NCBI GenBank assembly: GCA_002269645.1
Contig: NIVC01000750.1
Span: 124,001-188,000 of the forward strand
DNA: 64,000 bases
DNA from: Macrostomum lignano
Lineage: Eukaryota
Direction: 5' to 3'
The notes beneath the pieces were generated by a model that searched no databases, was not told the origin of the DNA, and worked only from the letters and a program-made list of their open reading frames with translations. Below, one piece after another: positions 65-51,301 of the stretch (positions are counted from its first letter, which is position 1; the number at the start of each line of letters is the position of its first letter). The position numbers and the translations under genes were made by a program.

Positions 65-655
65 GTAGAATCTCACCTGAGACTGTCATCTACAGGATTT
101 ACATGTAATCTCAACTGAGACTGTCATCTACAGGGACGGAATCTCACCTTAGATTGTCATCTACAGGGACAATCTCACTTGGGACTGTCATCTACATGGA
201 CAATCTCACTTGGGACTGTCATCTACAGGGATAGAATCTCAACTGAGACTGTTATCTACAGGTTGTACATGTAATCTCAACTGAGACTGTCATCTACAGG
301 GACGGAATCTCACCTTAGATTGTCATCTACAGGGACAATCTCACTTGGGACTGTCATCTACAGGGAAAATCTCACTTGGGACTGTCATCTACAGGGATAG
401 AATCTCAACTGAGACTGTCATCTACAGGGATAGAATCTCACTTGAGACTGTTATCTACAGAGATAGAATCTCACATAAGACTGTTATCTACAGAGATAGA
501 ATCTCACATAAGACTGTTATCTACAGAGATAGAATCTCACATAAGACTGTCATCTACAGGGACAGAATCTCACCTGAGACTGTCATCTACAGAGATAGAA
601 TCTCACCAGAGGCTATCATGTACAGGTATAGAATCTCACCTGAGACTATTGTCTA
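65..655. repeat. 33-bp minisatellite (gaatctcacNNNagactgtNatctacagNgata)
   Basis: Direct tandem copies. Confidence 0.95.
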
Positions 656-744
656 GTTCTCAGTAATCAAACCCAGGTACTTGACGATTAAACAGGCGTA
701 CTAACCGCAACCGACTCTGCTTAACTTTCGCCCGCCCCGCTCAC

Positions 745-1446
745 CAGTCTGGATGCAGTCGAACGGAATCGTGAACTGGCCAATAAAGTCGTCACCGATT
801 GCGTCATCGTCCAGCACCACGAGCCGCAGCAGGGCCAGCTCAGGCAGACTCACCCGGAACTCAAAGCACTCATCGAATACCGGATTATAGCCGTTGCCAT
901 GCACCGTTTTCGTCCGCTCTTCAGAACAGTCAGCGGGCAGGCCGAACACTTCCACAACAACGCAGGGGTCGGTGACGTCGCCCTTAGCAACGGAGCCGCG
1001 CGGCTTTGGCAGCTGCGAGCCGCTGATGACGCGAATATGGAGGCTGTGCGGCGCCAAGTCCGAGCCGCCTCCGCCGCGCTGGGCGAGGAAGGCGAAAGTC
1101 TGGCGCATGGCGCCCGGCTTCAGCACGAAGCCGCAGGAGCCGTTCTTAGAAAACTGGCCCCGGTTTAAATCGGTCATGAGGCCGGGAGTCTGATGGTTGA
1201 GGCAGACCAGCTGACAGCCGCAGCTCCACATGTCCTGAGGGTTGTAGTTGCTGGAGTCCACCCGGATGGCGTTGGGCTGCACTTGCACTAGGCAGCGCCG
1301 GCTGTACTCCACCAGGCCGTCCATGTCCGACTGGGCCAGACGGAATGCGGCCGACTCGCTGATTGACCAAACCTGCTGATGGAGCAGCTGGTGCTGCTGC
1401 TGGTGATGAGGCTGACGACGGGAGGCCGCCTGCGCCGAGTCGGATT
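745..1446 (-). CDS. PLCL: PLC-like gene, Y-box and C2 domain exon; gene continues beyond the left edge
   Basis: RVDSSNYNPQDMWSCGCQLVCLNHQT, NGSCGFVLKP and C2 motifs; GTGAGC donor after 745. Confidence 0.95.
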
Positions 1447-1494
1447 CTGGGAATGAGGACAGGAGTAATTTTTGTTGGATTTTCCGAGCTCTGC

Positions 1495-1870
1495 AATTTG
1501 GATTTTCTTGGGGTTCCCCCGGGTTGGATTTCCTTTTGGCCTCCCGAGGTGGATTTCTTTGGGGTTCCCTGAGGTGAATTTCCTTGAGGTTTCCCGAGGT
1601 GGATTTCCTTGGGGGTTTCCCGAGGTGGATTTCCTTGAGGTTTCCCGAGGTGGATTTCCTTGGGGGTTTCCCGAGGTGGATTTCCTTGAGGTTTCCCGAG
1701 GTGGATTTCCTTGGGGGTTTCCCGAGGTGGATTTCCTTGAGGTTTCCCGAGGTGGATTTCCTTGGGGGTTTCCCGAAGTGGATTTCCTTGGGGTTTCGTA
1801 GGCGGACTTTATTGAGATTTTCCTACGTGGATTTTCTTGGGGTTTCACCCGGGGGTGGATTTCCATGGGG
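1495..1870. repeat. 25/26-bp alternating minisatellite (gaggtggatttcctt...tttccc)
   Basis: Tandem copies with a 51-bp higher-order unit. Confidence 0.9.
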
Positions 1871-2027
1871 TTTTAGAGATTTCTTAGAAAATTATGAAAT
1901 TTCCTGAGGATTTTCCAAGATTTATTAATGACTTTTGGGATTTTCCAAGACTTCCATGGAATTGAAAAGGACTTTTCCCAGGATCTAGTTGAGAAAAAAA
2001 TTCTTTTTTCAGAACTTTTCAACTCAC

Positions 2028-2545
2028 TATAAAAATGGAAGCAGCAGTCGTCCAAATCCGCGAACCGCTCGGAGCCCAGAGCTGCCAGATCCGACAGCTC
2101 CTGGCTCAGCTTGATCCGCCTGCCGCACTGCTGCTGCTGAGGCGGCGGCTGCTGCTGCTGCTGCTGCTGCAGGGACTGCTGGGACTGATTTCCAGCCTTT
2201 TTAAACGCCTTGGGACTTCGATCGCGCTGAATATCCACATTGTCGTCCTCTTCGCTGACGTAGCCGAAGGCGACTGCGCTTTGCTGCACGGTGGCCACCT
2301 GCCGTTCGCAGCCAGCCGAAGCGCCACCTTCTGGCGGAGGCGGCAGCTTCTTGCACTTCACCAGGATGCGTCGGCGAAGTCGAGACGGCGTCAACAGCCG
2401 AGGATCCGACAGCAGTTGAACGTCCGACTCGCTGGCAGAGCCGGGGTCCAGCAGCCAGTCGCCAAGGGTGGAACGAATGAGCTGCACCATGCGGCACTGC
2501 TGGGCCAGGCTGCAGTGGTTCTCGATGCTCAGGATTAGCGGCATG
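2028..2545 (-). CDS. PLCL: PLC-like gene, X-box end and Q-rich X-Y linker (PLILSIENHCS...ILVKCKKL...LSQELSDL)
   Basis: ORF 1873-2586; cgcAG acceptor and GTGAGT donor. Confidence 0.92.
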
Positions 2546-2586
2546 CTGCGGGAGGGTTGAGGTGGCGCGTGCCAGACTCGTTCCAT

Positions 2587-2990
2587 CTTGAGGATCTTGA
2601 GGAATTCCCCTTCTCGGGGATTCCCATCTTGAGGGATTTCCCCTCCATAGAGATTCTTGATCTTGAAGGATTTCCCATCGTGAAGGATTTCCCATTCAGA
2701 TGGATTTGCATCCTGGGGGATTTCCCATCTTAAAAGATTTCAAATCTTTAGGGATTTCCCATCTTAAAAGATTTCAAATCTTTAGGGATTTCCCATCTTG
2801 AGGGATTTCACATCCTGAGGGATTTCCCATCTTGAGGGATTTCCCATCTTGAGAGATTTCCACTCTAGATGGATTTTCCATCGTAAATGATTTCCCATTT
2901 GAGGATCGTCAGGAATTCCCCATTTTGAGGATTTCTTTAACTTAAGGATTTCATATTTTAAGGGATTGCCCATCCTAAGGGATTGCACTA
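2587..2990. repeat. Degenerate ~18-bp repeat (ttcccatcttgagggat)
   Basis: Tandem, degenerate. Confidence 0.8.
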
Positions 2991-3499
2991 TTTTGAGTTC
3001 CGTTTTCCTATGGAATTTTTACATTTTACATAATTGTTACATGAGGGATTTCCCCATCATAAGAGAAACAGACTATTTTCTGGGATTCTGGGATATTTTT
3101 TCATCATGAGAGATTTACCAATGTGTTTTACGAATACTTCTTATTAGAGCAATAAAAAAATAATTTTAAAATATTGGCAATAGATTTTTCGGCATCTCTC
3201 AAGGCACCCTGCCGCTAATTACCCCGTAGCGCATGCAGGAGCTCGTCTCTTCATCTACCTTAACGACAGGACTTCAATTAAATTAATTAGACCCAGTTAG
3301 TGTCCTGTCAGCAGGTGCAATTAACATAATTATAATTTTTCAGGATAAAATCCTGAGAAATCAAATCGGCTTAAAGAAAGATAATTAATTAGCTTCATCA
3401 AATGTATTCAGTTTCATTTGTGCTGATTGCAGTTCTCAGAATTTGTTCGATTTCGAAGATAAAAAGCTTAAGTCGTTCCTAGAGACTTCCTAGCTGTTT

Positions 3500-4100
3500 C
3501 TAAAATCCCAAATTCTGGTCCCATCCCTACAGAAATCCCACACCCTGACCTCAACTCCGTGAGACATCCCACACCCTGACCACACCCCAATAGAAAATCT
3601 AATATTTGATCCCATCTCAATAAAAATCCCACACTCTGATCCCTTAACCAATAGAAATCCTACAACCCAATCCCATACCCAATAGAAATCCCACACCCCG
3701 ATCCCATACCCTATAGAAATCCCACACCCCGATCCCACCTCCAATAGAAATCCCACACTCTGATTCCACCTCCAATAGAAATCCCACACTCTGATTCCAC
3801 CTCCAATAGAAATCCCACACTCTGACCCCATACCCAATAGAAATCCCACACTCTGATCCCACCTCCATTAGAAATCGCACACTCTGATCCCACCTCCAAT
3901 AGAATTCCCACACTCTGATCCCATACCCAATAGAATTCCCACACTCTGATCCCATACCCAATAGAAATCCCACACCCGATCCCATACCCAATAGGAATCC
4001 CACACTTTGATCCCATCCAAAAATCCCACACTTTGATCACATCCAAAAGATCCCACACCTTGATCCCATCCAAAAATCCCACACTTTGATCCCATACCCC
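3500..4100. repeat. ~31-bp minisatellite (cccacactctgatcccaYNYccaatagaaat)
   Basis: Tandem copies. Confidence 0.9.
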
Positions 4101-4111
4101 AGAGCACTCAC

Positions 4112-4232
4112 TCGGTCTTGTAGAAGGCGAACTGCCTCACGGTATCCAGGACATCCCGCAGGCCAATCTTGCTGGTGAGAGTGTGGCCGTGGTATATGAT
4201 CGGCTGATCATTGGGGCCGTTCCACACTTCGA
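4112..4232 (-). CDS. PLCL: PLC-like gene, X-box exon (LEVWNGPNDQPIIYHGHTLTSKI...)
   Basis: PIIYHGHTLTSKI motif with the second catalytic His. Confidence 0.93.
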
Positions 4233-4338
4233 CTGGAATCAAATCATTAATGAGGCTGATTGTAAATCTAACAAAATTAAGTTTTAGATTTAATATACTG
4301 ACTAGAAACACAAGCAAGATAACAATCTACCAACTCAC

Positions 4339-4424
4339 GCTCAATGTAACGAACTTGCGACTTCAACGCTTTCTCGTAGCCTTCAACGCTGGACTTCCCT
4401 TTTAATTGGTCCTCAAGCAGGTAG
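4339..4424 (-). CDS. PLCL: PLC-like gene, X-box exon (YLLEDQLKGKSSVEGYEKALKSQVRYIE)
   Basis: YLLEDQL motif; tgcAG acceptor and GTGAGT donor. Confidence 0.92.
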
Positions 4425-4514
4425 CTGCATTTCAAGGTTAGGATAAAATCTCGTTTGGTGGGCAAAAAACTCCCCCCCCCGGCTAAAGTGAAACCAATCA
4501 GGATTTCTACAAAC

Positions 4515-4632
4515 GTGTTATGCGACGAGTTAATAAAGTAGTGCGCCAGCGGCTGTTCCATGTCCTGGCACACTGCCAGGTGCTCAGGGTCGAAAATATC
4601 GCAGAATTCCGATTGAAGAAAGGCGGTGAATC
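4515..4632 (-). CDS. PLCL: PLC-like gene, X-box start exon (QDMEQPLAHYFINSSHNT)
   Basis: Canonical X-box motif with the first catalytic His. Confidence 0.93.
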
Positions 4633-4689
4633 CTGGATCAGGGTTTTGGAGGGATATCAAAATTTATAGTTCGGAATTCGGGAAATTCA

Positions 4690-5180
4690 TGAAATTCGGG
4701 ATTTAATATTTGGTATTTGGGATATGAGATTTGAGATTTGGGATTTGAGATTCGAGATTAGAGATTTAGGATTTGGGATTCGGGATTCGGGATTTGGGAT
4801 TTGGGATTTGGGATTCGAGATTTGGGGTTCAGGATTTGGGATTCGGGATTTGAGATTTGGGATTTGAGATTCGGGATTTGGGGTTCAGGATTTGGGATTC
4901 GGGATTTGAGATTTGGGATTTGAGATTCGGGATTTGAGATTCGGGATTTGGGATTCGGGATTCGAGATTCGGGATTTGGGATTCGGGATTTGGGATTCGG
5001 GATTTAGGGTTCAGGACTTGGGATTCGGGATTTGAGATTTGGGATTTGAGATTCGGGATTTGGGATTCGGGATTTGGGATTCGGGATTTGAGATTCGGGA
5101 TTTGAGATTCGGGATTTGGGATTCGGGATTTGAGATTCGGGATTTGGAATCCTGGCTTTGGAATTTAGGATTCGGGGCTT
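4690..5180. repeat. GGGATTT/GAGATTC heptamer repeat
   Basis: Tandem. Confidence 0.9.
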
Positions 5181-5320
5181 ATTATTTGAGGTTTTCAACG
5201 CCACTTACGTACATGGTATTGGAAATGTCACATACTGTACAGGATTAAGTGCTAGGACAAACCATCAGGGATCTTTTACATGTACTGGTTTACTCAAAAT
5301 CCCATTAAACGCAGACCCAC

Positions 5321-5414
5321 CGTCAATGCCTAGCTGCCCTTTAGCCCGACCCTCTGTAGACGGCTCGAACTGGTTAATAATTTCCGAGCACTTCTCTTTG
5401 CTAACTTTCGAATT
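5321..5414 (-). CDS. PLCL: PLC-like gene, EF-hand exon (KCSEIINQFEPSTEGRAKGQLGID)
   Basis: Manual translation; typical PLC EF4 sequence; splice phase fits. Confidence 0.9.
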
Positions 5415-5488
5415 CTGAAATAAAGACACGAGCTCGAGTTAAGAACTGTCGATCATACAAAGATCAATAAAAGTTATGAGCACCGTAC

Positions 5489-5555
5489 CCCCTGTTCGGC
5501 TTCGAGAAACATGAGCAGATCTTCTGTAGACAAATAGTCTCCATCTGATGAGTAT
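5489..5555 (-). CDS. PLCL: PLC-like gene, EF-hand exon (YSSDGDYLSTEDLLMFLEAEQG)
   Basis: Manual translation; FLEAEQG motif; splice phase fits. Confidence 0.9.
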
Positions 5556-5709
5556 CTGCGCATTGGTGAAATCAGTCAAGTTAAGGTGCGACTCAGAAGG
5601 CAATGCAATCAATGCGGTTAGTAAACAATTCTGTATCACTTTCTGTACTTTCTGATTCTGTATCAGTATCTGTATCACTTTGGTCAGAACAATCTTTACT
5701 GAAGTATCT

Positions 5710-6080
5710 GATCTGAATCTGGGGTGTCCAGATCTGGGGTGTCCAGATCTGGGGTGTCAGGGATCTGGGGTGTCCGAGGGATCTGTGTGTCTGAGGGATC
5801 TGGTATGTCTGAGGGATCTGGGGTGTCCGAAGAATCTGTGTGTCTGAGGGATCTGTGTGTCTGAGGGATCTGGGATGTCCGAGGGATCTGTGTGTCTGAG
5901 AGATCTGGGGTGTCCGAGGGATCTGGGGTGTCCGAGGGATCTGGAGTGTCCGAGGGATCTGGGGTGTCCGAGGGATATGGGGTGTCCGAGGGATCTGGGG
6001 TGTCCGAGGGATCTGGGGTGTCCGAGGGATCTGGGGTGTCCGAGGGATCTGGGGTGTCCGAGGGATCTGGGGTGTCAGAG
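5710..6080. repeat. 18-bp minisatellite (gagggatctggggtgtcc)
   Basis: Tandem. Confidence 0.93.
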
Positions 6081-6524
6081 ATCCAAACAGGTCCATTAGA
6101 CAGGCCACTCCAAACTCACAAATAGTACAAGCCCCAGGACAGCGCCCATTTCCCTCCAAGTTCTTGCCGGGGGAAATCAGGCGGGCAGGCGAGAGCCCAA
6201 AGAAGAAAAAAACTGGAGCATCTTCTTCAAGACGGCAGGACATGCTCAGGCATGCAATAACCGTGTCGCTGAACTGGAAAAATGACTGATTTGGACTGGG
6301 GGGAGAGGGCGTGCTGCTCGCGAGCCTCTGTCTCTCCCTTCGCCACTCCTTTCTGCTGCTCCACGTTTTCTTCAGAAATTTAAGGCGCAGGATTTTTCTA
6401 GGAAAGCAATTAGTTATCATACACTGAGGGCTGGACTGATTTGGAATAAATGCGGAGGAGTAGTCGCTAACTGGAGATTGATGAAGGCTAATTGGTTAAA
6501 TTTGAAACAAGAGCAGAGAGATTA

Positions 6525-6895
6525 GATGCGATGAGACAGGATGAGATAAGACAGGATGAGACAGGATGAGACAGGATGAGACAGGATGAGACAGGATGAG
6601 ATGAGACAGTGGGACAGGATGAGATGAGACAGTGGGACAGGATGAGATAAGACAGGATGAGACAGGATGAGACAGGATGAGACAGGATGAGACAGGATGA
6701 GATGAGACAGTGGGACAGGATGAGATGAGACAGGATGGGACAGGATGAGATGAGACAAGAGGAGATGAGACAGGATGAGACAGGATGAGATTAGACAAGA
6801 GGAGATGAGACAGGATGAGACAGGATGAGATTAGACAAGAGGAGATGAGACAGGATGAGATTAGACAAGAGGAGATGAGACAGGATGAGACAGGG
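6525..6895. repeat. 10-bp repeat (gacaggatga)
   Basis: Tandem. Confidence 0.93.
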
Positions 6896-7068
6896 TTTAG
6901 CTTCAATCTGACTCCCCAGTCCCGATTTTGGCTATCTAAAAATTTGCAAAAAGTACGAAAATCGAACGGAAATAATTAAGAATTTAAGTGGAACTCGAGC
7001 CAACCGAAAGTCAATTCTCCAAGACCCATTTCGCCCCAGAGATCTGGCACGCCTGACATTTGACTTAC

Positions 7069-7181
7069 CTGACAAGCAGGAAGTAAACCTCCGGCCGCGT
7101 TGAAATCTCCTTAAACAGGTTAACAAACTCTGAGCTACTCAAACGACCGCGGGAAGAGATTGCGTTAGCGATGTCCACCTC
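7069..7181 (-). CDS. PLCL: PLC-like gene, EF-hand exon (SSEFVNLFKEISTRPEVYFLLVR)
   Basis: Manual translation; TRPEVYFLLV is characteristic of PLCL; GTAAGT donor. Confidence 0.9.
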
Positions 7182-7244
7182 CTGGATTTGTGGCGAATAG
7201 GAAGAAATTTTTATGGTGGGCTGAATAGGATAAAAATCACCAGT

Positions 7245-7890
7245 GACTAGGCTGAATGCAATGGGATCTTATTGGGATAAAATTCCCCTAGAACTAGGCT
7301 GAATGCAATGGGATCTTATTGGGATAAAAATCACCAGTGACTAGGCTGAATTCAATGGGATCTTATTGGGATAAAATTTCCCTGGAACTAGGCTGAATGC
7401 GATGGGATCTTATTGGGATAAAATTCCCATGGAATATGATGAATGCAATGGGATCTTATTGGGATAAAATTCCCATGGAATATGATGAATGCAATGGGAT
7501 CTTATTGAGATAAAATTCCCCTGGAACTAGGCTGAATGCAATGGGATCTTATTGGGATAAAATTCCCCTGGAACTAGGCTGAATGCAATGGGATCTTATT
7601 GGGATAAAATTCCCCTGGAACTAGGCTGAATGCAATGGGATCTTATTGGGATAAAATTCCCCTGGAACTAGGCTGAATGCAATGGGATCTTATTGGGATA
7701 AAATTCCCCTGGAACTAGGCTGAATGCAATGGGATCTTATTGGGATAAAATTCCCATGGAATATGCTGAATGCAATGGGATCTTATTGAGATAAAATTCC
7801 CCTGGAAATAGGCTGAATGCAATGGAATTTTATTGGGATAAAATTCCCCTGGGACTAGAATAATGCAATGGGATCTTATTGAGATAAAAA
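7245..7890. repeat. 46/47-bp minisatellite (tgaatgcaatgggatcttattgggataaaattcccctggaactaggc)
   Basis: About 14 copies. Confidence 0.95.
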
Positions 7891-7941
7891 TCCCAAGGAA
7901 AAGGAAGCAATGATGCAAAAGCAAAGAACCGTTACCCTCAC

Positions 7942-8071
7942 CTTCAACTTCTTTTTAATCCTGGAGGTGTTGACGCCGCTGTTGAGTTTCTTCATCAGCT
8001 GGATGACGTCCTGCTCATCGAGAAATCCGTCTTCGTCTAGTGAAGCGGCTGAGAACACTTCTTCAAGCCAT
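7942..8071 (-). CDS. PLCL: PLC-like gene, EF-hand exon (WLEEVFSAASLDEDGFLDEQDVIQLMKKLN...KKKLK)
   Basis: Part of ORF 7876-8229; splice sites and phase consistent. Confidence 0.88.
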
Positions 8072-8192
8072 CTAGCAATGTTATTTATTGGTAAACTAAT
8101 TTTTATGTCTACTGTCAATATGACTACCATATTTGGTAAGTGATGAGTGCATCTTGACTGCATCTTGGCAAATACGGACAAAGTTGACTCAC

Positions 8193-8232
8193 CTGTCGCG
8201 CATGAGTTGCCGTTTCTCAATTGTATCACTTG
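8193..8232 (-). CDS. PLCL: PLC-like gene, 40-nt PH/EF linker exon (SDTIEKRQLMRD)
   Basis: ttttAG acceptor, GTGAGT donor, phases 1 and 2 fit the neighbouring exons. Confidence 0.75.
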
Positions 8233-8309
8233 CTAAAATAAAAGTACAAATAAACCGGTTAGCAAGTTTTAGTGACCGATTTGCTGCGTATTCTAATTTA
8301 TTAATGACT

Positions 8310-8374
8310 AACTGACAAACAAACAGACACTAGGATGGACACTGACAGGCACTAAAACACAGACAGACAGACAC

Positions 8375-8453
<79 letters not shown>

Positions 8454-8464
8454 CACATACACTA

Positions 8465-8553
<89 letters not shown>

Positions 8554-8610
8554 CCCACACAGACACTAAGACAGACAGACAGACAGACACCTACACAGAC
8601 ACTAAGACAA

Positions 8611-8641
<31 letters not shown>

Positions 8642-8878
8642 CCCACACAGACACTAAGACAAACAGACAGACAGACACCCACACAGACACTAAGACAAAC
8701 AGACAGACAGACACCCACACAGACACTAAGACAAACAGACAGACAGACACCCACACAGACACTAAGACAGACAGACACCCACACAGACAGACAGACAGAC
8801 AGACAGACACTAAGACAGACAGACACCCACACAGACAGACAGACACCCACACAGACAGACAGACAGACAGACACCCAC

Positions 8879-8909
<31 letters not shown>

Positions 8910-8990
8910 CCCACACAGACACTAAGACAAACAGACAGACAGACAGACACCTACACAGACACTAAGACAAACAGACAGACAGACACCTAC

Positions 8991-9021
<31 letters not shown>

Positions 9022-9262
9022 CCCACACAGACACTAAGACAAACAGACAGACAGACACCCACACAGACACTAAGACAAACAGACAGACAGACACCCACAC
9101 AGACACTAAGACAAACAGACAGACAGACACCCACACAGACACTAAGACAGACAGACACCCACACAGACAGACAGACAGACAGACAGACACTAAGACAGAC
9201 AGACACCCACACAGACAGACAGACAGACACCCACACAGACAGACAGACAGACAGACACCCAC

Positions 9263-9293
<31 letters not shown>

Positions 9294-9382
9294 CCCACAC
9301 AGACACTAAGACAAACAGACAGACAGACACCCACACAGACAGACAGACACCCACACAGACAGACAGACAGACAGACACCCAC

Positions 9383-9413
<31 letters not shown>

Positions 9414-9474
9414 CCCACACAGACACTAAGACAAACAGACAGACAGACACCCACACAGACAGACAGACACCCAC

Positions 9475-9505
<31 letters not shown>

Positions 9506-9554
9506 CTAAGACAGACAGACACCCACACAGACAGACAGACAGACAGACACCCAC

Positions 9555-9585
<31 letters not shown>

Positions 9586-9590
9586 CCCAC

Positions 9591-9621
<31 letters not shown>

Positions 9622-9640
9622 CCCACACAAACAGACACAG
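8310..9640. repeat. Compound (GACA)n microsatellite with cccacaca/actaa interruptions
   Basis: Direct. Confidence 0.97.
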
Positions 9641-9658
9641 TAAAACGCGGTCACGCAC

Positions 9659-9874
9659 ACAGCTGCCCAGGCCGGCCATTGATGAGGCAGGTGAGGCCGG
9701 TGACCCACACGTTAGCGTCGTCAAGGGACACGGCGACAAGGTCCATGGACAGGAAGTCCTCGCCGTAGATGACGGTGAAAGCGCAGTCTGCAGGGTAGGC
9801 GGCGGCAACTTCGCTGTCCTTCAGGATGGCCGACGTGCGGCCGCGGCGAACCTCCTTGAGCTGGTCGATTGGCA
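9659..9874 (-). CDS. PLCL: PLC-like gene, PH domain C-half exon ([14 protein letters not shown]...[13 protein letters not shown])
   Basis: ORF 9651-9896; ttccAG acceptor; donor position approximate. Confidence 0.88.
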
Positions 9875-10274
9875 CTGGAAAGGAGGGAAAGAACACAAAA
9901 GGTGAGATCTATATATTCATATATTAGAAATCAAAAGTACATTCCATACACCTCTAACACACCCAACATTTTGTTTTAATTAACTCCATTTATTACTCTT
10001 TGCAATAATATATGAATCTATAAAATAATAAGCAAATATTAGCGAAAAATCAGCGAAGAGCAATGATTTATTACTTTCTACACGCTAATACACCAAGGGT
10101 AGAGTAAAAATGAATTATAGACTTCTTCAGACGGAGTGAGAGACTTAAGCGGGGCTCGTGAGCTAGGGGAGGCCATAGAAAGACAAACATTAAACTGGGA
10201 AGCGAGTGGACGGAGTCAAGGACACCCTGAACTAAAGTCTGGAAGTGCCAACTGTTTCCCATGACCTCTTCGAG

Positions 10275-10618
10275 TTTCGAGCTTGTGAATATTCGAGCTG
10301 GTGAATTTTAAGCTTGTGAAGATTCGAGCTTGTGAAGATTCGAGCTTGTGAAGATTCGAGCTTGTGAAGATTCGAGCTTGTGAAAATTCGAGCTTGTGAA
10401 GATTCGAGCTTGTGAATATTCGAGCTTGTGAATATTCGAGCTTGTGAATATTCGAGCTCGTGGATATTTGAGCTTGTGAAGATTCGAGCTGGTGAATTTT
10501 AAGCTTGTGAAGATTCGAGCTTGTGAATATTCGAGCTTGTGAAGATTCGAGCTTGTGAAGATTTGAGCTCGTGGATATTTGAGCTTGTGAAGATTCGAGC
10601 TCGTGGATATTCGAGCTT
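10275..10618. repeat. 16-bp repeat (ttcgagcttgtgaaNa)
   Basis: Tandem; same motif as inside the MITE at 54058-54392. Confidence 0.93.
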
Positions 10619-11094
10619 ATAAAATGCTTCCATCGGTATCCAAGGATTTTTAACTTATATCAAGTTTATGCCACATGCACATAAGACAAATTTGCGCTCC
10701 AGATTTTATTTTAGAGATGTCCTTGACCGAGTGCAAGCCAGTGCTAGCTCAGCCTCTCTACACGCTGAGCACTTCCGCGTGAGTGAGCTCAAATTGCCTA
10801 CATCTTTTAGAGCCTCTTACCCTCTCTCCCGCCTGTCTCTCAGCTCTCTCGTGTCGGCGAGAGCATTCCAGCGCTACTTGATTTTAGTTTCTGCTTACAT
10901 ACTTGGGGCCGGCGGCCAGCACTGGCTTGCATTGTATCGAATTAATTTCTCATGGCTGCTGCCCACATAAATTGAAGTTGGCCAGACTGATAGAGCGCTG
11001 TGTACTTTAAAATGAACAATCAGCATGCTTCACTGCGTGACGGGAGACAAAATTCTCAATATGAGTAATGTAGATGTTGTGATTGACAATATTC

Positions 11095-11640
11095 CCGATA
11101 CTGTAAGCCCGAATTCCCATACTGTAAGCCCAGATCCCCATATTATAAGCCCAGATCCCATACTATAAGCCCGAATTCCCATACTGTAAGCCCAGATCCC
11201 CATACTATAAGCCCAGATCCCATACTATAAGCCTGAATTCCCATACTATAAGCCCAGATCCCATACTATAAGCCCAGATCCCCATACTATAAGCCCAGAT
11301 CCCATACTATAAGCCTGAATTCCCATACTGTAAGCCTAGATCCCATACTGTAAGCCCGAATCCCCATACTCTAAGACCAGATCCCCATACTGTAAGCCCA
11401 GATCCCTATACTGTGAGCCCAGATCCCATACTGTAAGCCGGAATCCCCATACTATAAGCCCGAATCCCCATACTGTAAGCCCGGATCCCCATACTGTAAG
11501 CCCAGATCCCATACTGTAAGCCCGAATCCCCATACTGTAAGCCCAGATCCCCATACTGTAAGCCCAGATCCCCATACTGTAAGCTCAGATCCCTATACTT
11601 TAAGCCAGCCCAGGTCCCCATACTGTAAGCCCAGATCCCA
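11095..11640. repeat. ~22-bp minisatellite (ccccatactgtaagcccagat)
   Basis: Tandem. Confidence 0.93.
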
Positions 11641-12124
11641 CGACCTCTCCCGTACTCCTTCAGCCTTGCAGAAGCAGTGGCAGCCCATAATAACAGAGGC
11701 AATTCATTTGGCACTTGATTACGCCTCATCAATCCCGCCTTATTCCAATTCCAGCCCAGCATCCGCTCCAGGCATTCATAAATCATTGTGTCATTATCCA
11801 TTTCCTGAGTAGATTTCTCACACTAGCGATATCAGATGTATTCTCGCTGTGGAAGATGTAGATGTCCATAATTACTCGTAGGCGTTACGCGGGAGTTGCA
11901 GTGCAGAATCCTCCTTGTGTCAGTAGATCCCGCAGCAGTAGACAGATTATCGGATCAGCAGTTGACAACTTTTCTTACTTTGCTCTCGAGGGTTTATTTG
12001 CTCACTGGGGAGGCTTTTGGGAGGATCAATGCTCTAATTTATTGCCCTTACATTTCTCACACTCTTATTACATCAGACATCCTATATACTAAAAATCTCA
12101 GTCTAAATCTATCAATAGATCTAC

Positions 12125-12660
12125 TTCTGGATGTCCCTTTAGATGTCCTTTAGATGCTCTATAGACCTCCCTATTAATAATCCTTCAGATGTTCTTATAA
12201 GTCTCCCTCTAGATGTCCCTCTAGATGTTCCCCTAGATCTTCCCCTAGATTTCCCTCTAGATCTTCCCATATATCCCTCAAGATGTCCCTCTAGATCGCC
12301 CCTAGATCTCCATCTAAACTACACTCTAGATGTCTTTTAGATGTCTCTCTAGCGTCCCTCTAGATCACCCTGTAGATGTTCCTCTACAGTAGATGACCCT
12401 CTAGATGTCCCTCTAGATCACTCTCTAGATGCCCCTCTAGATGCCCTTCTAGATGTCCTTCTAGATGTCCCTCTAGATCGCCCCTAGATCTCCATCTAAA
12501 CTACACTCTAGATGTCTTTTGATGTCTCTCTAGCGTCCCTCTAGATCACCCTGTAGATTTTCCTCTACAGTAGATGACCCTCTAGATGTCCCTCTAGATC
12601 ACCCTCTAGATGCCCCTCTAGATGCCCTTCTAGATGTCCTTCTAGATGTCCCTCTAGCTC
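12125..12660. repeat. 13-bp degenerate repeat (gatgtccctctag) with a ~190-bp internal duplication
   Basis: Tandem. Confidence 0.88.
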
Positions 12661-13089
12661 TCTCCCTGGACAATTCAAATACGATACAATAGCAAATTAT
12701 AACATTTTTTACTTTATTTCCCGAATATTGAAACTGTCAAAAGAAGTGGCCATCTTTAGTCACAATGAAATCTAAAAGTACTAAAAATTCTTTTGAGCTG
12801 GCTTTCTGTGGAGCTTCCAGAGACACAAAAGCAAAGTTAAGAAGAGACTTGGCCCGATGGGGCGCGGGCTATTCTCATGCGAGCGCCAAGGTTGAATAAA
12901 TACTCACGGTCTCCTTCTTCCCTGCGTGCCGGTGTTAACACTAAACTGATAATACAATATCAAGCTCAGCCTCTCTTTGAATTTCTATGCACACATTGAG
13001 TCTCTGCTTTCATATGCGCGACCGAGGTAGAAATTTTTTCTTGTAGGAAGCTGGTATAGTGCAAAGCAATACAATGATGAGAGCGATAG

Positions 13090-13440
13090 AGTGGATTGCT
13101 AATCTAGCATATAACGGAAGGCAATAGAATGGATTGCTAATCTAGCATATCAAGGATGAGAGGGAATAGAATGGATTGCTAATCTAGCATATCACGGATG
13201 AGAGGGAATAGAATGAATCGCTAATCTAGCATATCACGGATGATAGGGAATAGAATGGATTGCTAATCTAGCATATCAAGGATGAGAGAGAACAGAATAG
13301 ATTGCTAATCTAGCATATCAAGGATGAGAGAGAACAGAATAGATTGCTAATCTAGCATATCAAGGATGAGAGAGAACAGAATAGATTGCTAATCTAGCAT
13401 ATCAAGGATGAGAGAGAACAGAATAGATTGCTAATCTAGC
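13090..13440. repeat. 42-bp minisatellite with an internal tgcta-atc-tagca palindrome
   Basis: About 8 copies. Confidence 0.92.
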
Positions 13441-13919
13441 GGCCGCTAGCCTATCACGGATGGGAGGAGCATTGCACAATTCTTAGTATATAGCATAAAG
13501 GATCTACCGTGCGTAAAATGTAGCACCAGAAATCAAGGCCCAGCTTCATCAAAGGAAGGCGAATCTAATTTCCGAAATGGCAAACAAGTACAGTCCCTTG
13601 CTAGCAGAGACTGCAGCTGGAGGCCGTGACCCGAGCTAGAATAGTAATTGCAGCTGTAAAGGGCTAGATTAGTGGCTGGGGACAGGATCAATGGATAGGC
13701 AAAGGTTTTTTCGATCGCAGCAACCCATCTAGTCCCTGCCAAACACTCAATCTATTTTATCTTGTCCTTGTAGTTCATGCAGAACGGACAGAGAATGGAA
13801 ACTACGTTTAACAATCACAGAATAACAGGAAGGCGCACTGGACTGATTGCAGCGTGTTGCTGCCTATCCATGCGTCTGTCTGCTGGACTGTGCCCAAATA
13901 TTTTATAAGGCGCTTGTAG

Positions 13920-14305
13920 GAGTGGGTGTGCGAAGTGGGGTGGGTGTGCGGAGTGGGGTGGGTGTGTGGAGTGGGGTGGGTGTTCGGAGAGGGGTGAGGG
14001 TGCAGAGTGGGTGGGTGTTCGGAGTGGGGTGGGTGTGCGGAGTGGGTGGGTGTTCGGAGTGGGGTGGGTGTGCGGAGTGGGGTAGGTGTTCAGAGTGGGA
14101 TGGGTGTGCGGAGTGGGGTGGGTGTTCGGAGAGGGGTGAGTGTGCGGAGTGGGGTGGGTGTGCGGAGTGGGGTGGGTGTGCGGAGTGGGATGGGTGTGCG
14201 CAGTGGGGTGGGTGTTCAGAGTGGGATGGGTGTTCGCAGTGGGGTGGGTGTTCGGAGAGGGGTGAGTGTGCAGAGTGGGATGGGTGTGCAGAGTGGGGCG
14301 GGTGT
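13920..14305. repeat. G-rich 18-bp minisatellite (ggagtggggtgggtgtgc)
   Basis: Tandem. Confidence 0.92.
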
Positions 14306-14362
14306 GAGATACTAGATGCTGCATTTAATGTACCCAAAAATGATTTAATTAAAAGAACTCAC

Positions 14363-14512
14363 ATTTCGCTTTCTGTCTCTTCTTAGAAGACGGATGCCAC
14401 CGAATTTCCATGGTCTCAGTGTCCAAAAAGAAGAAGCGTTTAAAGTGTCGACCGCTAGACCGAATCTTCAGCAATTCGGTGCCGTCGCGCATGTAGTTGA
14501 CGCAATCGGGCG
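14363..14512 (-). CDS. PLCL: PLC-like gene, PH domain exon (PDCVNYMRDGTELLKIRSSGRHFKRFFFLDTETMEIRWHPSSKKRQKAK)
   Basis: Manual translation; typical PLC PH N-half; cAG acceptor and GTGAGT donor. Confidence 0.9.
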
Positions 14513-14714
14513 CTGGTTAATGGCATTAAGGAAAAGGGGCAGCACAGTAAAATACTCGTATTCTTTCGCAAAAAAGGCGACACACAGCGTCTTTTATGAC
14601 CCGCGGTATACCGGCTAGTTTATGGTTTATAAGATTCTGGACACAGTTGTTAGCAATTAGGTAAAGCAAAATAAATGTACGAAGACAGGGTGCTGTGTCA
14701 CATGCCCGGACGAA

Positions 14715-15105
14715 GGACTACAATGAAGGGATAGTGATAAAAGGATCGTGATGAAGGGATCATGATCAAGGGATTGTGATCAAGGGATAGTGAGTGACGA
14801 AGGGATAGTGATGAAGGGATAGTGATGAAGGGATAGTGATGAAGGGATAGTGATGAAGGGATAGTGATGAAGGGATAGTGATGAAGGGACCGTGATGAAG
14901 GGATTGTGATGAAGGGATAATGATGAATGAAGGGATTGTGATGAAGGGAGAGTGATGAAGGGATTGTGATGAAGACTTTATGATAAAGGGATTGTGATGA
15001 AGGGATAGTGTTGAGGGGATAGTGATGAAGGGATTGTGATGAAGGGATTGTGATGAAGGAAGAGTGATGAAGGGATTGTGATGAAGAATTAGTGATGAAG
15101 GGATA
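14715..15105. repeat. 14-bp repeat (gtgatgaagggata)
   Basis: Tandem. Confidence 0.92.
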
Positions 15106-16067: not shown

Positions 16068-17378
16068 CGAGGGTCACTCAGAAAGTTCTTAGCTTGAACA
16101 CGAAAACAGCAACAAATGAACTAAAAAACGACTACAAGTGCTCAAAATACTCTCCACCGGCATTGATACAGGCTTGCATCCTGTGAAACCAGCTGTCGAA
16201 GCACTGCCGCCAATCCTCATCCCGGAGCTCCTCGATGATGTTTTTAAACTCATTCACAGCTTCTTCCGGTGAAGAAAAGACCTGGCCCTTCAGAATCTCC
16301 TTGCACTTCGGAAACAGAAAAAAGTCGCACGGTGCCAGGTCTGGACTGTAAGCAGGGTGAGTCATCAGCTGGACCCCACAGTCAGCCAGAAACTCCAGAG
16401 TTTGAGCCGCCGTGTGCGCGCTGGCGTTGTCGTGGTGCAGAAGCACCCCACGCATTCCGCACCTTGGGCGCCTCTGGCTCACAGCAGAAAAGACCTTGGG
16501 CAGGCAAACCGTTGTGTACCAGTCAGCGGTGACTGTCTGGCGATCTTCAAGTGAAACGGAAGCCACATGCCCAGTGCGCATGAAGAAACAGGCCACCATC
16601 TGCTTGCCGACACTCCGGCTGCGTCGAAACTTGGTGGGGCTGTCCTCGTCTCCAAAGGTCCACATGGCTGACTGGCGCTTGCTTTCGGGGTCGTATTGAT
16701 AAATCCAGGTCACATCGCCCGTGAGGATGTCCCAGATACGCCGGCTGGTCCCGGATTCGAATTTCTGCAGCATGAATCGGCACCAAGCCACCCTGGTGTC
16801 CTTCTGCACGTCCGACAGCTGATGGGGGATCCACCGGGAAGCCAGCTTCCGCACTCCAAGGTGTTCGTGCATAATGGCGTGCACACTCCCCGATCCAATA
16901 CCGATCTCCTGCTGGATCTGCTGGTAGGTCACTCGCCGGTCAGCGGCAATCATGCTGGACACAGCGCAGATATTTTCTGGAGTCACTGCGTCACAGGGTC
17001 TCCCGGATCGATGTTCATCTTCGAGGCTTTCTCGACCTCGGCGAAACTCAGCGAACCAGTTTTTGACGGTTGCGTATGAAGGACATACATGGGTGAAAAC
17101 GTTCTGTAAAGTTTGATACGATTCGGCCGGCGACTTGCCTTGCTTGAAGTGCAGGTACATCATTGCTCTGAAGTCGCGATTTTCCAGCTTCATTGTTGAA
17201 TTGAAGATCTCAGGGGGGTGAACTGACTTTAACTCGCTGCAGTGGACTCAAAAGTGGCTGCTTCTGTTTGAAATTTTTGCTGCGATACTTTTAAAAGTTG
17301 GTCTTTACCATAGACAAATTTCATGCTTCTACGTCTCGTGGATCCTACTCAGGCTAAATACTTTCTGAGTGACCCTCG
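16068..17378 (-). mobile_element. Full-length mariner (Tc1/mariner DD34D) DNA transposon in a PLCL intron
   Basis: TIR CGAGGGTCACTCAGAAAGT perfect for 19 bp (30 bp with 3 mismatches); TA at 16066-16067 and 17379-17380. Confidence 0.96.
16132..17193 (-). CDS. Mariner transposase, 353 aa, uninterrupted
   Basis: WIPHQL, TGD, HDNASAH and YSPDLAPCDFFLF motifs; 34 residues between the 2nd and 3rd Asp. Confidence 0.97.
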   Translation of the reverse strand: MKLENRDFRAMMYLHFKQGKSPAESYQTLQNVFTHVCPSYATVKNWFAEFRRGRESLEDEHRSGRPCDAVTPENICAVSSMIAADRRVTYQQIQQEIGIGSGSVHAIMHEHLGVRKLASRWIPHQLSDVQKDTRVAWCRFMLQKFESGTSRRIWDILTGDVTWIYQYDPESKRQSAMWTFGDEDSPTKFRRSRSVGKQMVACFFMRTGHVASVSLEDRQTVTADWYTTVCLPKVFSAVSQRRPRCGMRGVLLHHDNASAHTAAQTLEFLADCGVQLMTHPAYSPDLAPCDFFLFPKCKEILKGQVFSSPEEAVNEFKNIIEELRDEDWRQCFDSWFHRMQACINAGGEYFEHL

Positions 17379-37755: not shown

Positions 37756-38092
37756 TATCATGTACCTGGCCCCCATCTACCACGTGGAATTCATATCTAA
37801 CAGATGACACCCAGCTGTCTAACATGCGGCCAAGTTGTCTAACAGGTAAGAGCCATGTCTCCTCCGTAAAACAGACAAACAGCTCACAGCATGAGAAGTG
37901 TGTCTCTAACGCTTCGCTAGCATCCTTCGCATAGATATCGATTTGCGCCAATCCAGAAGACATCTCCTCGCAACACCCACTTGGCCCCTCATTGGCTGCC
38001 CGCAATGAGCATTTAAACTCGAATTTTTCTTGCTCATTCAAATCTCGCGCCAGGAAAATCAGATAGAAAACAACTCAAGCCAGTCCGTCATC

Positions 38093-38455
38093 ATGACTCA
38101 ACCAAGTGGAACGGTGCCAGTGGCCCTGCTGCTACTTCTAGCTCTGGCTATTCAACTCTCGGCTGAGAGTGTCTCAGCCGCTCCTTCTGGTCGAGGCTCG
38201 AACCAACGGCTCGTGGCCGCTCCGGCTGACTGGGCCGCCGCTGCCGCCGCCGCCGCCGCAGCCGCAGCGGACGTCGCAGCGGAAGAGGCCGCCGAGGCCA
38301 ACGACAGCTCCGACCTGACGGAGCCCGGCGACAAGCGAGGCATGTTCCGCTATGGAAAACGACAGATGTTCCGGTTCGGAAAGCGAGCCCTGCTCGGAAA
38401 GCGAGCTTACATGTTCCGCTATGGAAAACGGCAGATTGAAAGCCCCCAATACTGA
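38093..38455 (+). CDS. Neuropeptide precursor (GMFRYa, QMFRFa, AYMFRYa, ALLa)
   Basis: Hydrophobic signal-like N-terminus, acidic spacer, four G-KR amidation/cleavage sites. Confidence 0.93.
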   Translation: MTQPSGTVPVALLLLLALAIQLSAESVSAAPSGRGSNQRLVAAPADWAAAAAAAAAAAADVAAEEAAEANDSSDLTEPGDKRGMFRYGKRQMFRFGKRALLGKRAYMFRYGKRQIESPQY

Positions 38456-51062: not shown

Positions 51063-51301
51063 CGTGTCGGTCTGGCTATTCCAAACTTATGAAAATTATA
51101 TTTACAAACATAATACTAACAAGTTAGGAAAATTACCCCCTCCAGAACAGCCAAAAATGCATATTAAAAAGTGGTTAAGCTTCGATTAAATTGCTGAACT
51201 AGTAGTGCATTGCAGCATCAAAAAAGATCCCATCGAAGACCATAATCCTTAGAAAAATGAATAAAAGTGAATAATTTCCAACGCCATGCCGGGCAGCTCA
51301 C

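What the first reader, a model, noticed from the sequence alone, without database searches (positions are those of the whole stretch)
1274..4520. PLCL/PRIP-type enzyme keeps both catalytic histidines but has lost the PIP2 headgroup-binding Arg and Tyr
Seen: spliced X/Y boxes read SSHNTYL, RYIELEVWNG, PIIYHGHT, ILSIENHCS, ILVKCKKL, VWSISE and CLVQVQPNAIRVDSSNY. Established: in PLC-delta1, H311 and H356 are catalytic; N312/E341/D343/E390 bind Ca2+; K438, K440, S522, R549 and Y551 (LSRIYP) bind the inositol and its 4,5-phosphates. Vertebrate PRIP/PLCL1-2 are inactive chiefly through loss of the H356 equivalent while keeping SRVYP-like sequence. Here the pattern is reversed: both His, N312, E341, E390 and K438/K440/S522 equivalents are kept, D343 becomes E, and R549/Y551 both become Q (1291-1274). 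Inference: either an independent route to a pseudo-enzyme, or an enzyme with shifted specificity (poor on PIP2, possibly active on PI or another headgroup).
Basis: partly seen in the sequence, partly recalled or inferred. Interest (0 to 1): 0.72.

Follow-up and report, generated by a model that had tools for sequence, protein, structure and literature searches.

The report
Flatworm PLC-like gene, altered substrate pocket
This is the flatworm (Macrostomum) copy of the "inactive phospholipase C-like" gene PLCL/PRIP; it keeps the chemical catalytic residues but has lost two residues that hold the PIP2 headgroup, a change shared with parasitic flatworms, where the site has decayed further, so it is probably a signalling scaffold, not a normal PIP2-cleaving enzyme.

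Summary
On the minus strand, 11 exons with GT-AG borders (14512 to 745) give an uninterrupted 778-aa protein with PH, EF-hand-like, PI-PLC-X, PI-PLC-Y and C2 domains. The last exons lie beyond the window start. HMMER aligns CLVQVQP to CLSRIYP of rat PLC-delta1 without gaps, so R549 is Q (codon 1285-1283) and Y551 is Q (1279-1277). D343 is E. H311, N312, E341, H356, E390, K438, K440 and S522 are kept. The best relatives are invertebrate "inactive PLC-like protein 2" proteins. The source is almost certainly Macrostomum lignano.

The new finding is that this pattern is not private to this gene. Every trematode PLCL orthologue recovered also has D343E and lacks R549 (Q in schistosomes) and Y551. 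The trematodes have additionally lost N312 (K) and H356 (R). Mollusc, echinoderm and cnidarian PLCLs keep all residues. Mites, ticks, a leech, amphioxus and vertebrates each lost different ones.

The best reading is a PRIP-like non-catalytic or very weak protein at an early stage of a flatworm-specific decay of the active site. A PI-preferring residual enzyme is not excluded. Interest is moderate to low: a new variant of a known pseudo-enzyme family.

The parts
14363..14512 (-). Exon with the N-terminal half of the PH domain (…DCVNYMRDGTELLKIRSSGRHFKRFFFLDTETMEIRWHPSSKKRQKAK). An upstream ATG exon was not identified.
   Evidence: tblastn with Liolophura and Asterias PLCL; AG/GT borders; aligns to the PLC-delta1 PH domain 1mai, E 9.6e-10
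9661..9874 (-). Exon with the C-terminal half of the PH domain
7942..8095 (-). EF-hand region exon (…IARWLEEVFSAASLDEDGFLDEQDVIQLMKKLN…)
   Evidence: the choice of acceptor is supported by the alignment to PLC-gamma 'IERWLRKQF'
7069..7181 (-). EF-hand region exon (…RLSSSEFVNLFKEISTRPEVYFLLV)
5489..5555 (-). EF-hand-like exon (YSSDGDYLSTEDLLMFLEAEQG)
5321..5414 (-). EF-hand-like exon (NSKVSKEKCSEIINQFEPSTEGRAKGQLGIDG)
4515..4632 (-). X-box exon 1. Holds H311 (codon 4522-4520) and N312 (4519-4517), both kept.
4339..4424 (-). X-box exon 2. Holds E341 (4342-4340), kept.
4112..4232 (-). X-box exon 3. D343 is replaced by E (4230-4228). H356 is kept (4191-4189).
2028..2545 (-). End of the X box plus the Gln-rich X-Y linker. 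E390 (2523-2521), K438 (2358-2356) and K440 (2352-2350) are kept.
745..1446 (-). Y box and most of the C2 domain. S522 is kept (1366-1364). S548 is V (1288-1286), R549 is Q (1285-1283, CAA) and Y551 is Q (1279-1277, CAG). The gene continues beyond the window start.

Best explanation
The locus is the Macrostomum lignano orthologue of PLCL/PRIP, the 'phospholipase C-related but catalytically inactive protein'. It is an intact, spliced, selectively maintained gene with the PLC-delta-type architecture (PH, EF-hand, X/Y TIM barrel, C2).

In the flatworm lineage the substrate pocket was remodelled. The arginine that clamps the 4-phosphate (R549) and the tyrosine that stacks on the inositol ring (Y551) were replaced, and the Ca2+ ligand D343 became E.

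The most likely consequence (inferred) is that the protein no longer hydrolyses PI(4,5)P2 at a useful rate. It would then act as mammalian PRIP does: a PH-domain-driven inositol-phosphate/phosphoinositide-binding scaffold or buffer. Macrostomum would represent an early stage of this decay. Trematodes represent a later stage, in which N312 and H356 are gone as well.
For: Shown:
- Intact 11-exon reading frame with canonical splice sites.
- Pfam EF-hand_like, PI-PLC-X (4e-52), PI-PLC-Y (4e-30) and C2; PH domain matches 1mai.
- Ungapped alignment of LVQVQP on LSRIYP of PLC-delta1.
- Closest relatives are PLCL-type proteins, and the protein falls outside the eta and delta-4 groups.
- Trematode PLCLs all read H-K-E-E-R-E at H311/N312/E341/D343/H356/E390, have Q, E or K at R549 and have C, I, L, V or R at Y551. 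This covers Schistosoma spp., Heterobilharzia, Fasciola, Paragonimus, Opisthorchis, Echinostoma and Calicophoron; the Dicrocoelium and Trichobilharzia models are incomplete in the X box but agree where they align. Names come, residues.
- They share with the window RYIE[LI]EV in place of RC[VLI]ELDCW, a hydrophobic residue at S548, and AIGDDFIGQ..PFDC in C2.
- Canonical residues persist in molluscs, echinoderms, hemichordate and cnidarians, so the ancestral PLCL had a complete site.
- The clade lost active-site residues repeatedly: arthropods E341K; mites R549Q; ticks R549H/Y551S; leech; amphioxus; vertebrate H356T/N.

Established knowledge:
- R549 with K438, K440 and S522 binds the 4- and 5-phosphates, and Y551 packs on the inositol ring (PMC12195575).
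- PRIP has PLC-delta1 domain organisation, binds Ins(1,4,5)P3 and lacks PLC activity (PMC5390332).

From my own memory, not retrieved here: the mutagenesis papers of Wang et al. 1996 and Ellis et al. 1998 in J Biol Chem report that R549 is needed for PIP2 hydrolysis but not PI hydrolysis, and that alanine replacement of most active-site residues reduced activity by orders of magnitude.
Against: - Both catalytic histidines, N312, E341, E390, K438, K440 and S522 are all retained, and D343E is conservative. Nothing in the chemistry of catalysis is visibly broken.
- If the R549/Y551 loss dates to the common ancestor of Macrostomum and trematodes, long retention of those residues in Macrostomum hints at continued use. 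This is weakened because PLCL2, reported to lack PLC activity, retains them too.
- The gene tree does not recover a flatworm clade (12 of 200 bootstraps). Shared ancestry of the substitutions therefore rests on shared derived motifs plus the species tree, and convergence is not excluded.
- No planarian, polyclad, catenulid or cestode orthologue was sampled.
- There is no expression, biochemical or structural evidence.
Confidence: 0.55

Rival explanations
1. It is still an enzyme, with shifted substrate preference. It would be a Ca2+-dependent PI-PLC that has lost the 4-phosphate clamp and so works poorly on PI(4,5)P2, but still cleaves PI, or another inositol or non-inositol headgroup, at a low rate.
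For: - H311, H356 and the Ca2+ ligands are all present (D343E is conservative), as are K438, K440 and S522.
- 43 of 49 positions that are near-invariant in canonical PLCs are kept.
- Hydrophobic-ridge positions stay hydrophobic (L320 = L, L529 = F, W555 = I; read from the alignment).
- Two diverged M. lignano copies keep the same Y-box peptide.
- From memory, not retrieved: PLC-delta1 R549 mutants lose PIP2 hydrolysis but keep PI hydrolysis.
Against: - Y551, which packs against the inositol ring of any phosphoinositide substrate (PMC12195575), is also gone and is replaced by a polar Gln. PI binding should therefore suffer too.
- The same lineage-specific changes in trematodes were followed by loss of N312 and H356, as expected if catalysis was already dispensable.
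- Retention of the remaining residues does not discriminate, because inactive PLCL2 retains them as well.
Confidence: 0.3
2. It is a fully competent PIP2-specific PLC in which other residues compensate for R549 and Y551.
For: Only the general retention of the catalytic machinery. No compensating basic or aromatic residue was identified.
Against: - R549 and Y551 are kept in 240 of the first 267 delta/eta/PLCL sequences tabulated.
- Almost all named exceptions lie in the PLCL clade, whose vertebrate members lack PLC activity (PMC5390332).
- Neighbouring positions in the window (RRCLVQVQPNAIR) offer no new basic or aromatic side chain compared with canonical KRFLSRIYPNGMR.
Confidence: 0.07
3. It is an artefact or a decaying pseudogene: an assembly error, or a dead gene copy in a repeat-rich polyploid genome.
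For: The genome is very repeat-rich, with a minisatellite in nearly every intron. The public M. lignano protein models for this gene are frame-shifted.
Against: - 778 codons run without a stop across 11 exons with canonical splice sites.
- Domain E-values are strong.
- The Q-V-Q peptide is reproduced in independent models, one with synonymous differences.
- At least three base changes are needed.
Confidence: 0.03

Closest known systems
Vertebrate PRIP-1/PRIP-2 (PLCL1, PLCL2), phospholipase C-related catalytically inactive proteins
   Same: - Same clade by best hits and tree.
- Same PH, EF-hand, X, Y, C2 architecture.
- An incomplete PLC active site.
- Probably the same kind of non-catalytic inositol-phosphate or phosphoinositide-binding role (inferred).
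   Different: - Vertebrate proteins lose H356 (T in PLCL2; N or K in PLCL1, with E390 also lost) and keep [SA]R[IV]YP.
- The window protein keeps H356 and E390 and loses R549 and Y551, with D343E.
- Vertebrate partner-binding regions (PP1, GABARAP) were not examined.
Trematode PLCL orthologues (for example Schistosoma mansoni A0A3Q0KTJ3, Paragonimus westermani KAA3678538.1 'inactive phospholipase C-like protein 2')
   Same: - D343E.
- The RYIE[LI]EV motif.
- A hydrophobic residue at S548.
- R549 lost (Q in schistosomes, as in the window).
- Y551 lost.
- C2 motif AIGDDFIGQ..PFDC.
   Different: - Trematodes have also lost N312 (K), H356 (R), S522 and the ENHCS motif (ECFAS/DCYAS).
- They keep only 32-33 of 49 near-invariant core positions, against 43 of 49 here.
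- They are much longer proteins (1000-1700 aa).
Canonical invertebrate PLCL proteins (molluscs, echinoderms, cnidarians), annotated 'inactive PLC-like protein 2'
   Same: These are the closest sequences overall: 47-51% identity over the 568-aa catalytic fragment, and about 54-58% over well-aligned columns. They have the same domain order.
   Different: They keep every active-site residue (HNEDHEKK / SSRY). By sequence they look like active enzymes despite their annotation.
PLC-delta1 (rat, PDB 1djx/1qas)
   Same: Same fold-defining domains. The alignment runs through the X, Y and C2 regions at E 1.8e-103. The catalytic His pair and the Ca2+ ligands are conserved.
   Different: R549Q, Y551Q, S548V and D343E. 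The protein belongs to the PLCL clade, not the delta clade.
Chelicerate PLCLs (mites Dinothrombium, Leptotrombidium and Oppia; ticks Ornithodoros and Ixodes)
   Same: Independent loss of R549 (Q or H) and Y551 (A, V, L, I or S), with both histidines kept.
   Different: They also carry E341K, which is arthropod-wide, and keep D343.

Membership tests
PLCL / PRIP clade of PLC-delta-like proteins | Domain order PH, EF-hand, PI-PLC X, PI-PLC Y, C2 | tested here: met
   Pfam EF-hand_like, PI-PLC-X, PI-PLC-Y and C2. PH domain aligned to 1mai at E 9.6e-10. The end of C2 and the C-terminal tail lie outside the window.
PLCL / PRIP clade of PLC-delta-like proteins | Closest relatives and tree position are with PLCL, not with the delta, eta or zeta isozymes | tested here: met
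   The top hits are PLCL-type, at E 1e-169 to 1e-131. The eta and delta-4 hits come lower, at 1e-121 and weaker. In NJ trees the window protein lies outside the eta and delta-4 groups, each with 100% bootstrap. The order of branches inside the PLCL clade is unresolved.
PLCL / PRIP clade of PLC-delta-like proteins | Substitution of the second catalytic histidine (H356), as in characterised vertebrate PRIP | tested here: not met
   H356 is His (codon 4191-4189). This feature defines the vertebrate members only. Mollusc, echinoderm and cnidarian PLCLs also keep it.
PLCL / PRIP clade of PLC-delta-like proteins | No phospholipase C activity | not testable with these tools
   Needs an enzyme assay.
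PLCL / PRIP clade of PLC-delta-like proteins | PH domain that binds Ins(1,4,5)P3 | tested here: inconclusive
   In the alignment to 1mai, the equivalents of K30 (K), K32 (R), R40 (R), S55 (S) and K57 (K) are kept or conservatively replaced. W36 is R and R56 is S. The list of ligand residues is from memory. Binding itself was not tested.
Catalytically active PI(4,5)P2-specific PI-PLC (EC 3.1.4.11) | Catalytic histidine pair H311/H356 | tested here: met
   Both are His.
Catalytically active PI(4,5)P2-specific PI-PLC (EC 3.1.4.11) | Ca2+ ligands N312, E341, D343, E390 | tested here: inconclusive
   N, E and E are kept. D343 is Glu, which is conservative but of unknown effect.
Catalytically active PI(4,5)P2-specific PI-PLC (EC 3.1.4.11) | 4- and 5-phosphate ligands K438, K440, S522, R549 | tested here: not met
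   K, K and S are kept. R549 is Gln.
Catalytically active PI(4,5)P2-specific PI-PLC (EC 3.1.4.11) | Aromatic residue Y551 packing on the inositol ring | tested here: not met
   It is Gln. Y or F is present in 240 of the first 267 sequences tabulated.

The most novel reading that the evidence does not exclude
Macrostomum PLCL is a working Ca2+-dependent phospholipase C that has traded PIP2 preference for PI or another headgroup. More broadly, the ancestral metazoan 'inactive PLC-like' protein was an active enzyme and still is in molluscs, echinoderms and cnidarians. On that view catalytic death in the PRIP family happened independently at least five times by different routes: vertebrates, arthropods, flatworms, leech and amphioxus.
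Probability: 0.2. Interest if true: 0.6.

Novelty: new variant of a known kind. Interest (0 to 1): 0.36.

Why it matters
PRIP/PLCL is a textbook pseudo-enzyme, but it is known only from vertebrates, where the second catalytic histidine is missing.

These data suggest that the family began with a complete active site, which is still intact in molluscs, echinoderms and cnidarians. The site then appears to have been dismantled several times by different routes.

The flatworm route starts at the substrate-binding residues, not the catalytic ones. Macrostomum, a laboratory flatworm reported to be amenable to RNAi and transgenesis, preserves an intermediate state. That offers a natural series for studying how an enzyme turns into a scaffold: canonical PLCL, then Macrostomum, then trematodes.

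The data also indicate that the database label 'inactive' on invertebrate PLCLs is carried over from vertebrates and is not supported by their sequences.

For the window itself, the practical result is a corrected gene model. The public M. lignano protein models of this gene are frame-shifted.

Tried and rejected
I used the contiguous exon 11 instead. For the same reason I did not submit the spliced protein for structure prediction, so there is no 3D model. Exon 11 alone is half a TIM barrel and would not give a meaningful fold.
- The look-up of encoding contigs found no contig for the M. lignano model P0004. No DNA of the second gene copy was available, so no dN/dS could be calculated.
It was replaced by a numpy version.
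- The NJ tree did not recover Macrostomum plus trematodes as a clade (12 of 200 bootstraps). The trematodes are long-branched and attach to the nematode and arthropods. I therefore treat common origin of the substitutions as an inference from shared motifs, not as shown.
- The count of retained near-invariant core positions was meant to separate live from dead enzymes. It does not, because inactive PLCL2 scores as high as the window protein.
- The profile search for more flatworm orthologues returned mostly short fragments. It gave one further neodermatan-like sequence (P0427: R549K, Y551T), whose organism could not be identified from its SRA run.
- Literature searches found nothing usable on M. 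lignano phospholipase C, PLCL evolution in invertebrates, or R549/Y551 mutagenesis. The mutagenesis statements therefore rest on memory.
- Pseudogene and sequencing-error readings were rejected, for the reasons given under rival explanations.
Full report
**What is there**

The window is eukaryotic DNA with short exons separated by introns full of minisatellites. On the minus strand, eleven exons read in one frame with no stop:
- 14512-14363
- 9874-9661
- 8095-7942
- 7181-7069
- 5555-5489
- 5414-5321
- 4632-4515
- 4424-4339
- 4232-4112
- 2545-2028
- 1446-745

Each exon is bounded by AG and GT, and together they give 778 residues. The first exon starts in phase 1, so at least one upstream coding exon with the ATG exists. 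I did not find it. The last exon ends at a GT donor inside the C2 domain, and only repeat-filled intron follows down to position 1. The 3' end of the gene therefore lies outside the window.

Pfam finds EF-hand_like (1.4e-12), PI-PLC-X (4.2e-52), PI-PLC-Y (4.4e-30) and C2 (1.5e-15) in the C-terminal 568 residues. The N-terminal part aligns with the PH domain of PLC-delta1 (1mai, 9.6e-10).

**Source organism**

Two UniRef proteins of Macrostomum lignano (P0004, P0074) match exon by exon. In P0004, 412 of 573 residues lie in exact blocks of 8 or more residues shared with my model. The remainder of both models is the same DNA read in wrong frames. They are frame-shifted gene models from an older assembly. 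The window is therefore M. lignano or something nearly identical.

**Check of the observation**

In the Y box the alignment is ungapped from S522 through DSSNY, with 'clvqvqpnairvdssny' over 'clsriypagwrtdssny'.

Counting along the chain confirms the following:
- S522 is S.
- S548 is V.
- R549 is Q (CAA, 1285-1283).
- Y551 is Q (CAG, 1279-1277).
- In the X box H311, N312, E341, H356, E390, K438 and K440 are kept.
- D343 is E (GAA, 4230-4228).

I repeated the mapping with HMMs of the X and Y boxes over all retrieved PLC sequences and got the same residues.

The two positions are close to invariant. In the first 267 sequences tabulated, 240 have R with Y or F. R to Q plus Y to Q needs at least three base changes. 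P0004 encodes the same CLVQVQPNAIRVDSSNY. P0074 carries the same stretch out of frame as AAWCRCSPTPSG, where the window gives AA*CKCSPTPSG. This implies CTA>CTG and CAA>CAG, both synonymous in the true frame. That last point is an inference from protein strings, not from DNA.

**Which family**

The best database hits are invertebrate proteins annotated 'inactive phospholipase C-like protein 2' or unnamed PLCs from molluscs, annelids and echinoderms. They have 47-51% identity and E-values of 1e-169 to 1e-155. Vertebrate PLCL2 and PLCL1 follow, and the eta and delta-4 hits come lower, at 1e-121 and weaker.

In neighbour-joining trees the window protein sits among the PLCL sequences. It lies outside the eta and delta-4 groups, which each have 100% bootstrap. 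It has a long branch (0.40-0.43), and the order of branches inside the PLCL clade is not resolved.

**The comparative picture, which changes the story**

I searched 1.84 billion representative proteins with exon 11. I then named the unusual hits and searched again from one of them. Residues are listed in the order H311 N312 E341 D343 H356 E390 K438 K440 / S522 S548 R549 Y551:

| Group | Residues |
|---|---|
| Canonical PLC-delta and PLC-eta | HNEDHEKK / SSRY |
| PLCLs of molluscs, echinoderms, a hemichordate and cnidarians (Nematostella, Acropora) | same as canonical (S or T at S548) |
| Vertebrate PLCL2 | HNEDTEKK with [SA]R[VI][YF] |
| Vertebrate PLCL1 | also loses E390 |
| Window | HNEEHEKK / SVQQ |

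Every trematode PLCL with a complete X box reads H-K-E-E-R-E/D at the first six positions. This covers Schistosoma spp., Heterobilharzia, Fasciola, Paragonimus, Opisthorchis, Echinostoma and Calicophoron. The Dicrocoelium and Trichobilharzia models are incomplete there but agree where they align. At the Y-box positions the trematodes have:
- a hydrophobic residue at 548;
- Q (schistosomes), E or K at 549;
- C, I, L, V or R at 551.

The trematodes and the window also share RYIE[LI]EV where other PLCLs have RC[VLI]ELDCW. In C2 they share VVLDD.AIGDDFIGQ.T.PFDC. An unidentified neodermatan-like fragment (P0427) reads LVKVTP.

The flatworm orthologues I could find therefore all carry D343E and lack R549 and Y551. 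The parasites have in addition lost N312, H356, S522 and the ENHCS motif.

Active-site decay also happened separately elsewhere in the clade:
- E341K in arthropods;
- R549Q with Y551 to A, V, L or I in mites;
- R549H/Y551S in ticks;
- several losses in the leech Helobdella and in amphioxus;
- Y551T in Toxocara;
- H311Y/E341A in the Paralvinella model.

**Interpretation**

*Established.* R549, together with K438, K440 and S522, binds the 4- and 5-phosphates. Y551 packs on the inositol ring. These contacts explain the preference for PI(4,5)P2 (PMC12195575). PRIP has PLC-delta1 domain organisation, binds Ins(1,4,5)P3, lacks PLC activity and binds PP1/PP2A (PMC5390332).

*From memory, not retrieved.* R549 mutants of PLC-delta1 lose PIP2 hydrolysis but keep PI hydrolysis (Wang et al. 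1996). Alanine replacement of most active-site residues reduced activity by orders of magnitude (Ellis et al. 1998).

*Inference.* The Macrostomum protein very probably does not cleave PIP2 efficiently. I favour a PRIP-like non-catalytic role (0.55) for three reasons:
- The ring-stacking residue is gone as well.
- The same changes in trematodes were followed by loss of catalytic residues.
- The clade as a whole tolerates active-site loss repeatedly.

A residual PI-preferring activity is the main rival (0.3), because nothing in the chemical machinery is broken.

I tried to separate the two by counting how many positions that are near-invariant in canonical PLCs are kept. The counts, out of 49, were:
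- window: 43
- PLCL2: 45-46
- PLCL1: 38-42
- trematodes: 32-33

Inactive PLCL2 scores as high as the window, so the measure does not discriminate.

**Limits**

- The gene tree does not group Macrostomum with the trematodes (12 of 200 bootstraps). The trematodes are long-branched. A single origin of the flatworm substitutions is therefore inferred from shared derived motifs and the species phylogeny, not demonstrated.
- No planarian, polyclad, catenulid or cestode sequence was recovered.
- The spliced protein was not accepted by the representative-search tool, and I did not try to pass it to the structure tool. There is no 3D model.
- No transcript evidence was available.

**Novelty and verdict**

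I found no paper on flatworm PLCL or on active-site variation in invertebrate PLCLs. The locus is a member of a known family with a distinct pattern of active-site substitutions that appears to be undescribed. I class it as a new variant of a known kind.

Its functional alternatives remain open, with the pseudo-enzyme reading favoured. The claim loses some of its singularity because the pattern is lineage-wide and has parallels in chelicerates. It gains context as one stage of a repeated enzyme-to-scaffold transition. Interest is moderate to low (0.36).

Noticed in passing
window 16132-17193 (-): An intact 353-aa mariner/Mos1-type transposase ORF (Pfam HTH_48 5.7e-12, HTH_32, Transposase_1, DDE_3). 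It lies just upstream of the first identified PLCL exon, on the same strand. It is possibly a recently active element.
   Followed up: partly
window 38030-38455 (+): An ORF with a signal-peptide-like start (MTQPSGTVPVALLLLLALAIQLSAESVSA). Its C-terminal run is GDKR-GMFRYG-KR-QMFRFG-KR-ALLG-KR-AYMFRYG-KR. This is the layout of an amidated FMRFamide-like/RYamide neuropeptide precursor. There is no Pfam hit.
   Followed up: partly
window 51249-51689 (-): An ORF ending in [31 protein letters not shown], which is the first half of a homeodomain (Pfam PF00046 positions 1-27, E 1.8e-5) cut by an intron. From memory, the sequence looks Msx-like.
   Followed up: partly
window 66-15000, introns of the PLCL gene: Nearly every intron carries its own minisatellite array (periods 10 to 47 bases, 9 to 46 copies). 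Examples are 3503-4099, 4708-5176, 5717-6080, 7228-7894 and 8359-9637. Most long ORFs listed in the window are translations of such arrays.
   Followed up: partly
UniRef M. lignano proteins A0A1I8F7Y7 (P0004) and P0074, compared with window 745-9874: Both public protein models of this gene are mosaics of correct and frame-shifted segments. They lack the SSHNT and ENHCS exons or read them out of frame. They would mislead any automated active-site survey.
   Followed up: yes
PLCL orthologues in other phyla (P0081, P0330, P0352, P0394-P0398, P0133, P0171, P0136, P0124, P0131, P0002): There is repeated, independent loss of different active-site residues across the PLCL clade: mites TQV[AVL]PD, ticks THVSP, arthropod-wide E341K, leech, amphioxus, Toxocara, and the Paralvinella model. 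Mollusc, echinoderm and cnidarian proteins annotated 'inactive' keep every catalytic and substrate-binding residue.
   Followed up: partly
L003 (Logan SRR26958231 contig), protein P0427: An unidentified organism encodes a PLCL fragment 68-73% identical to trematode orthologues, with LVKVTP (R549K, Y551T). It may be a further neodermatan lineage. The organism could not be determined from the run accession.
   Followed up: partly
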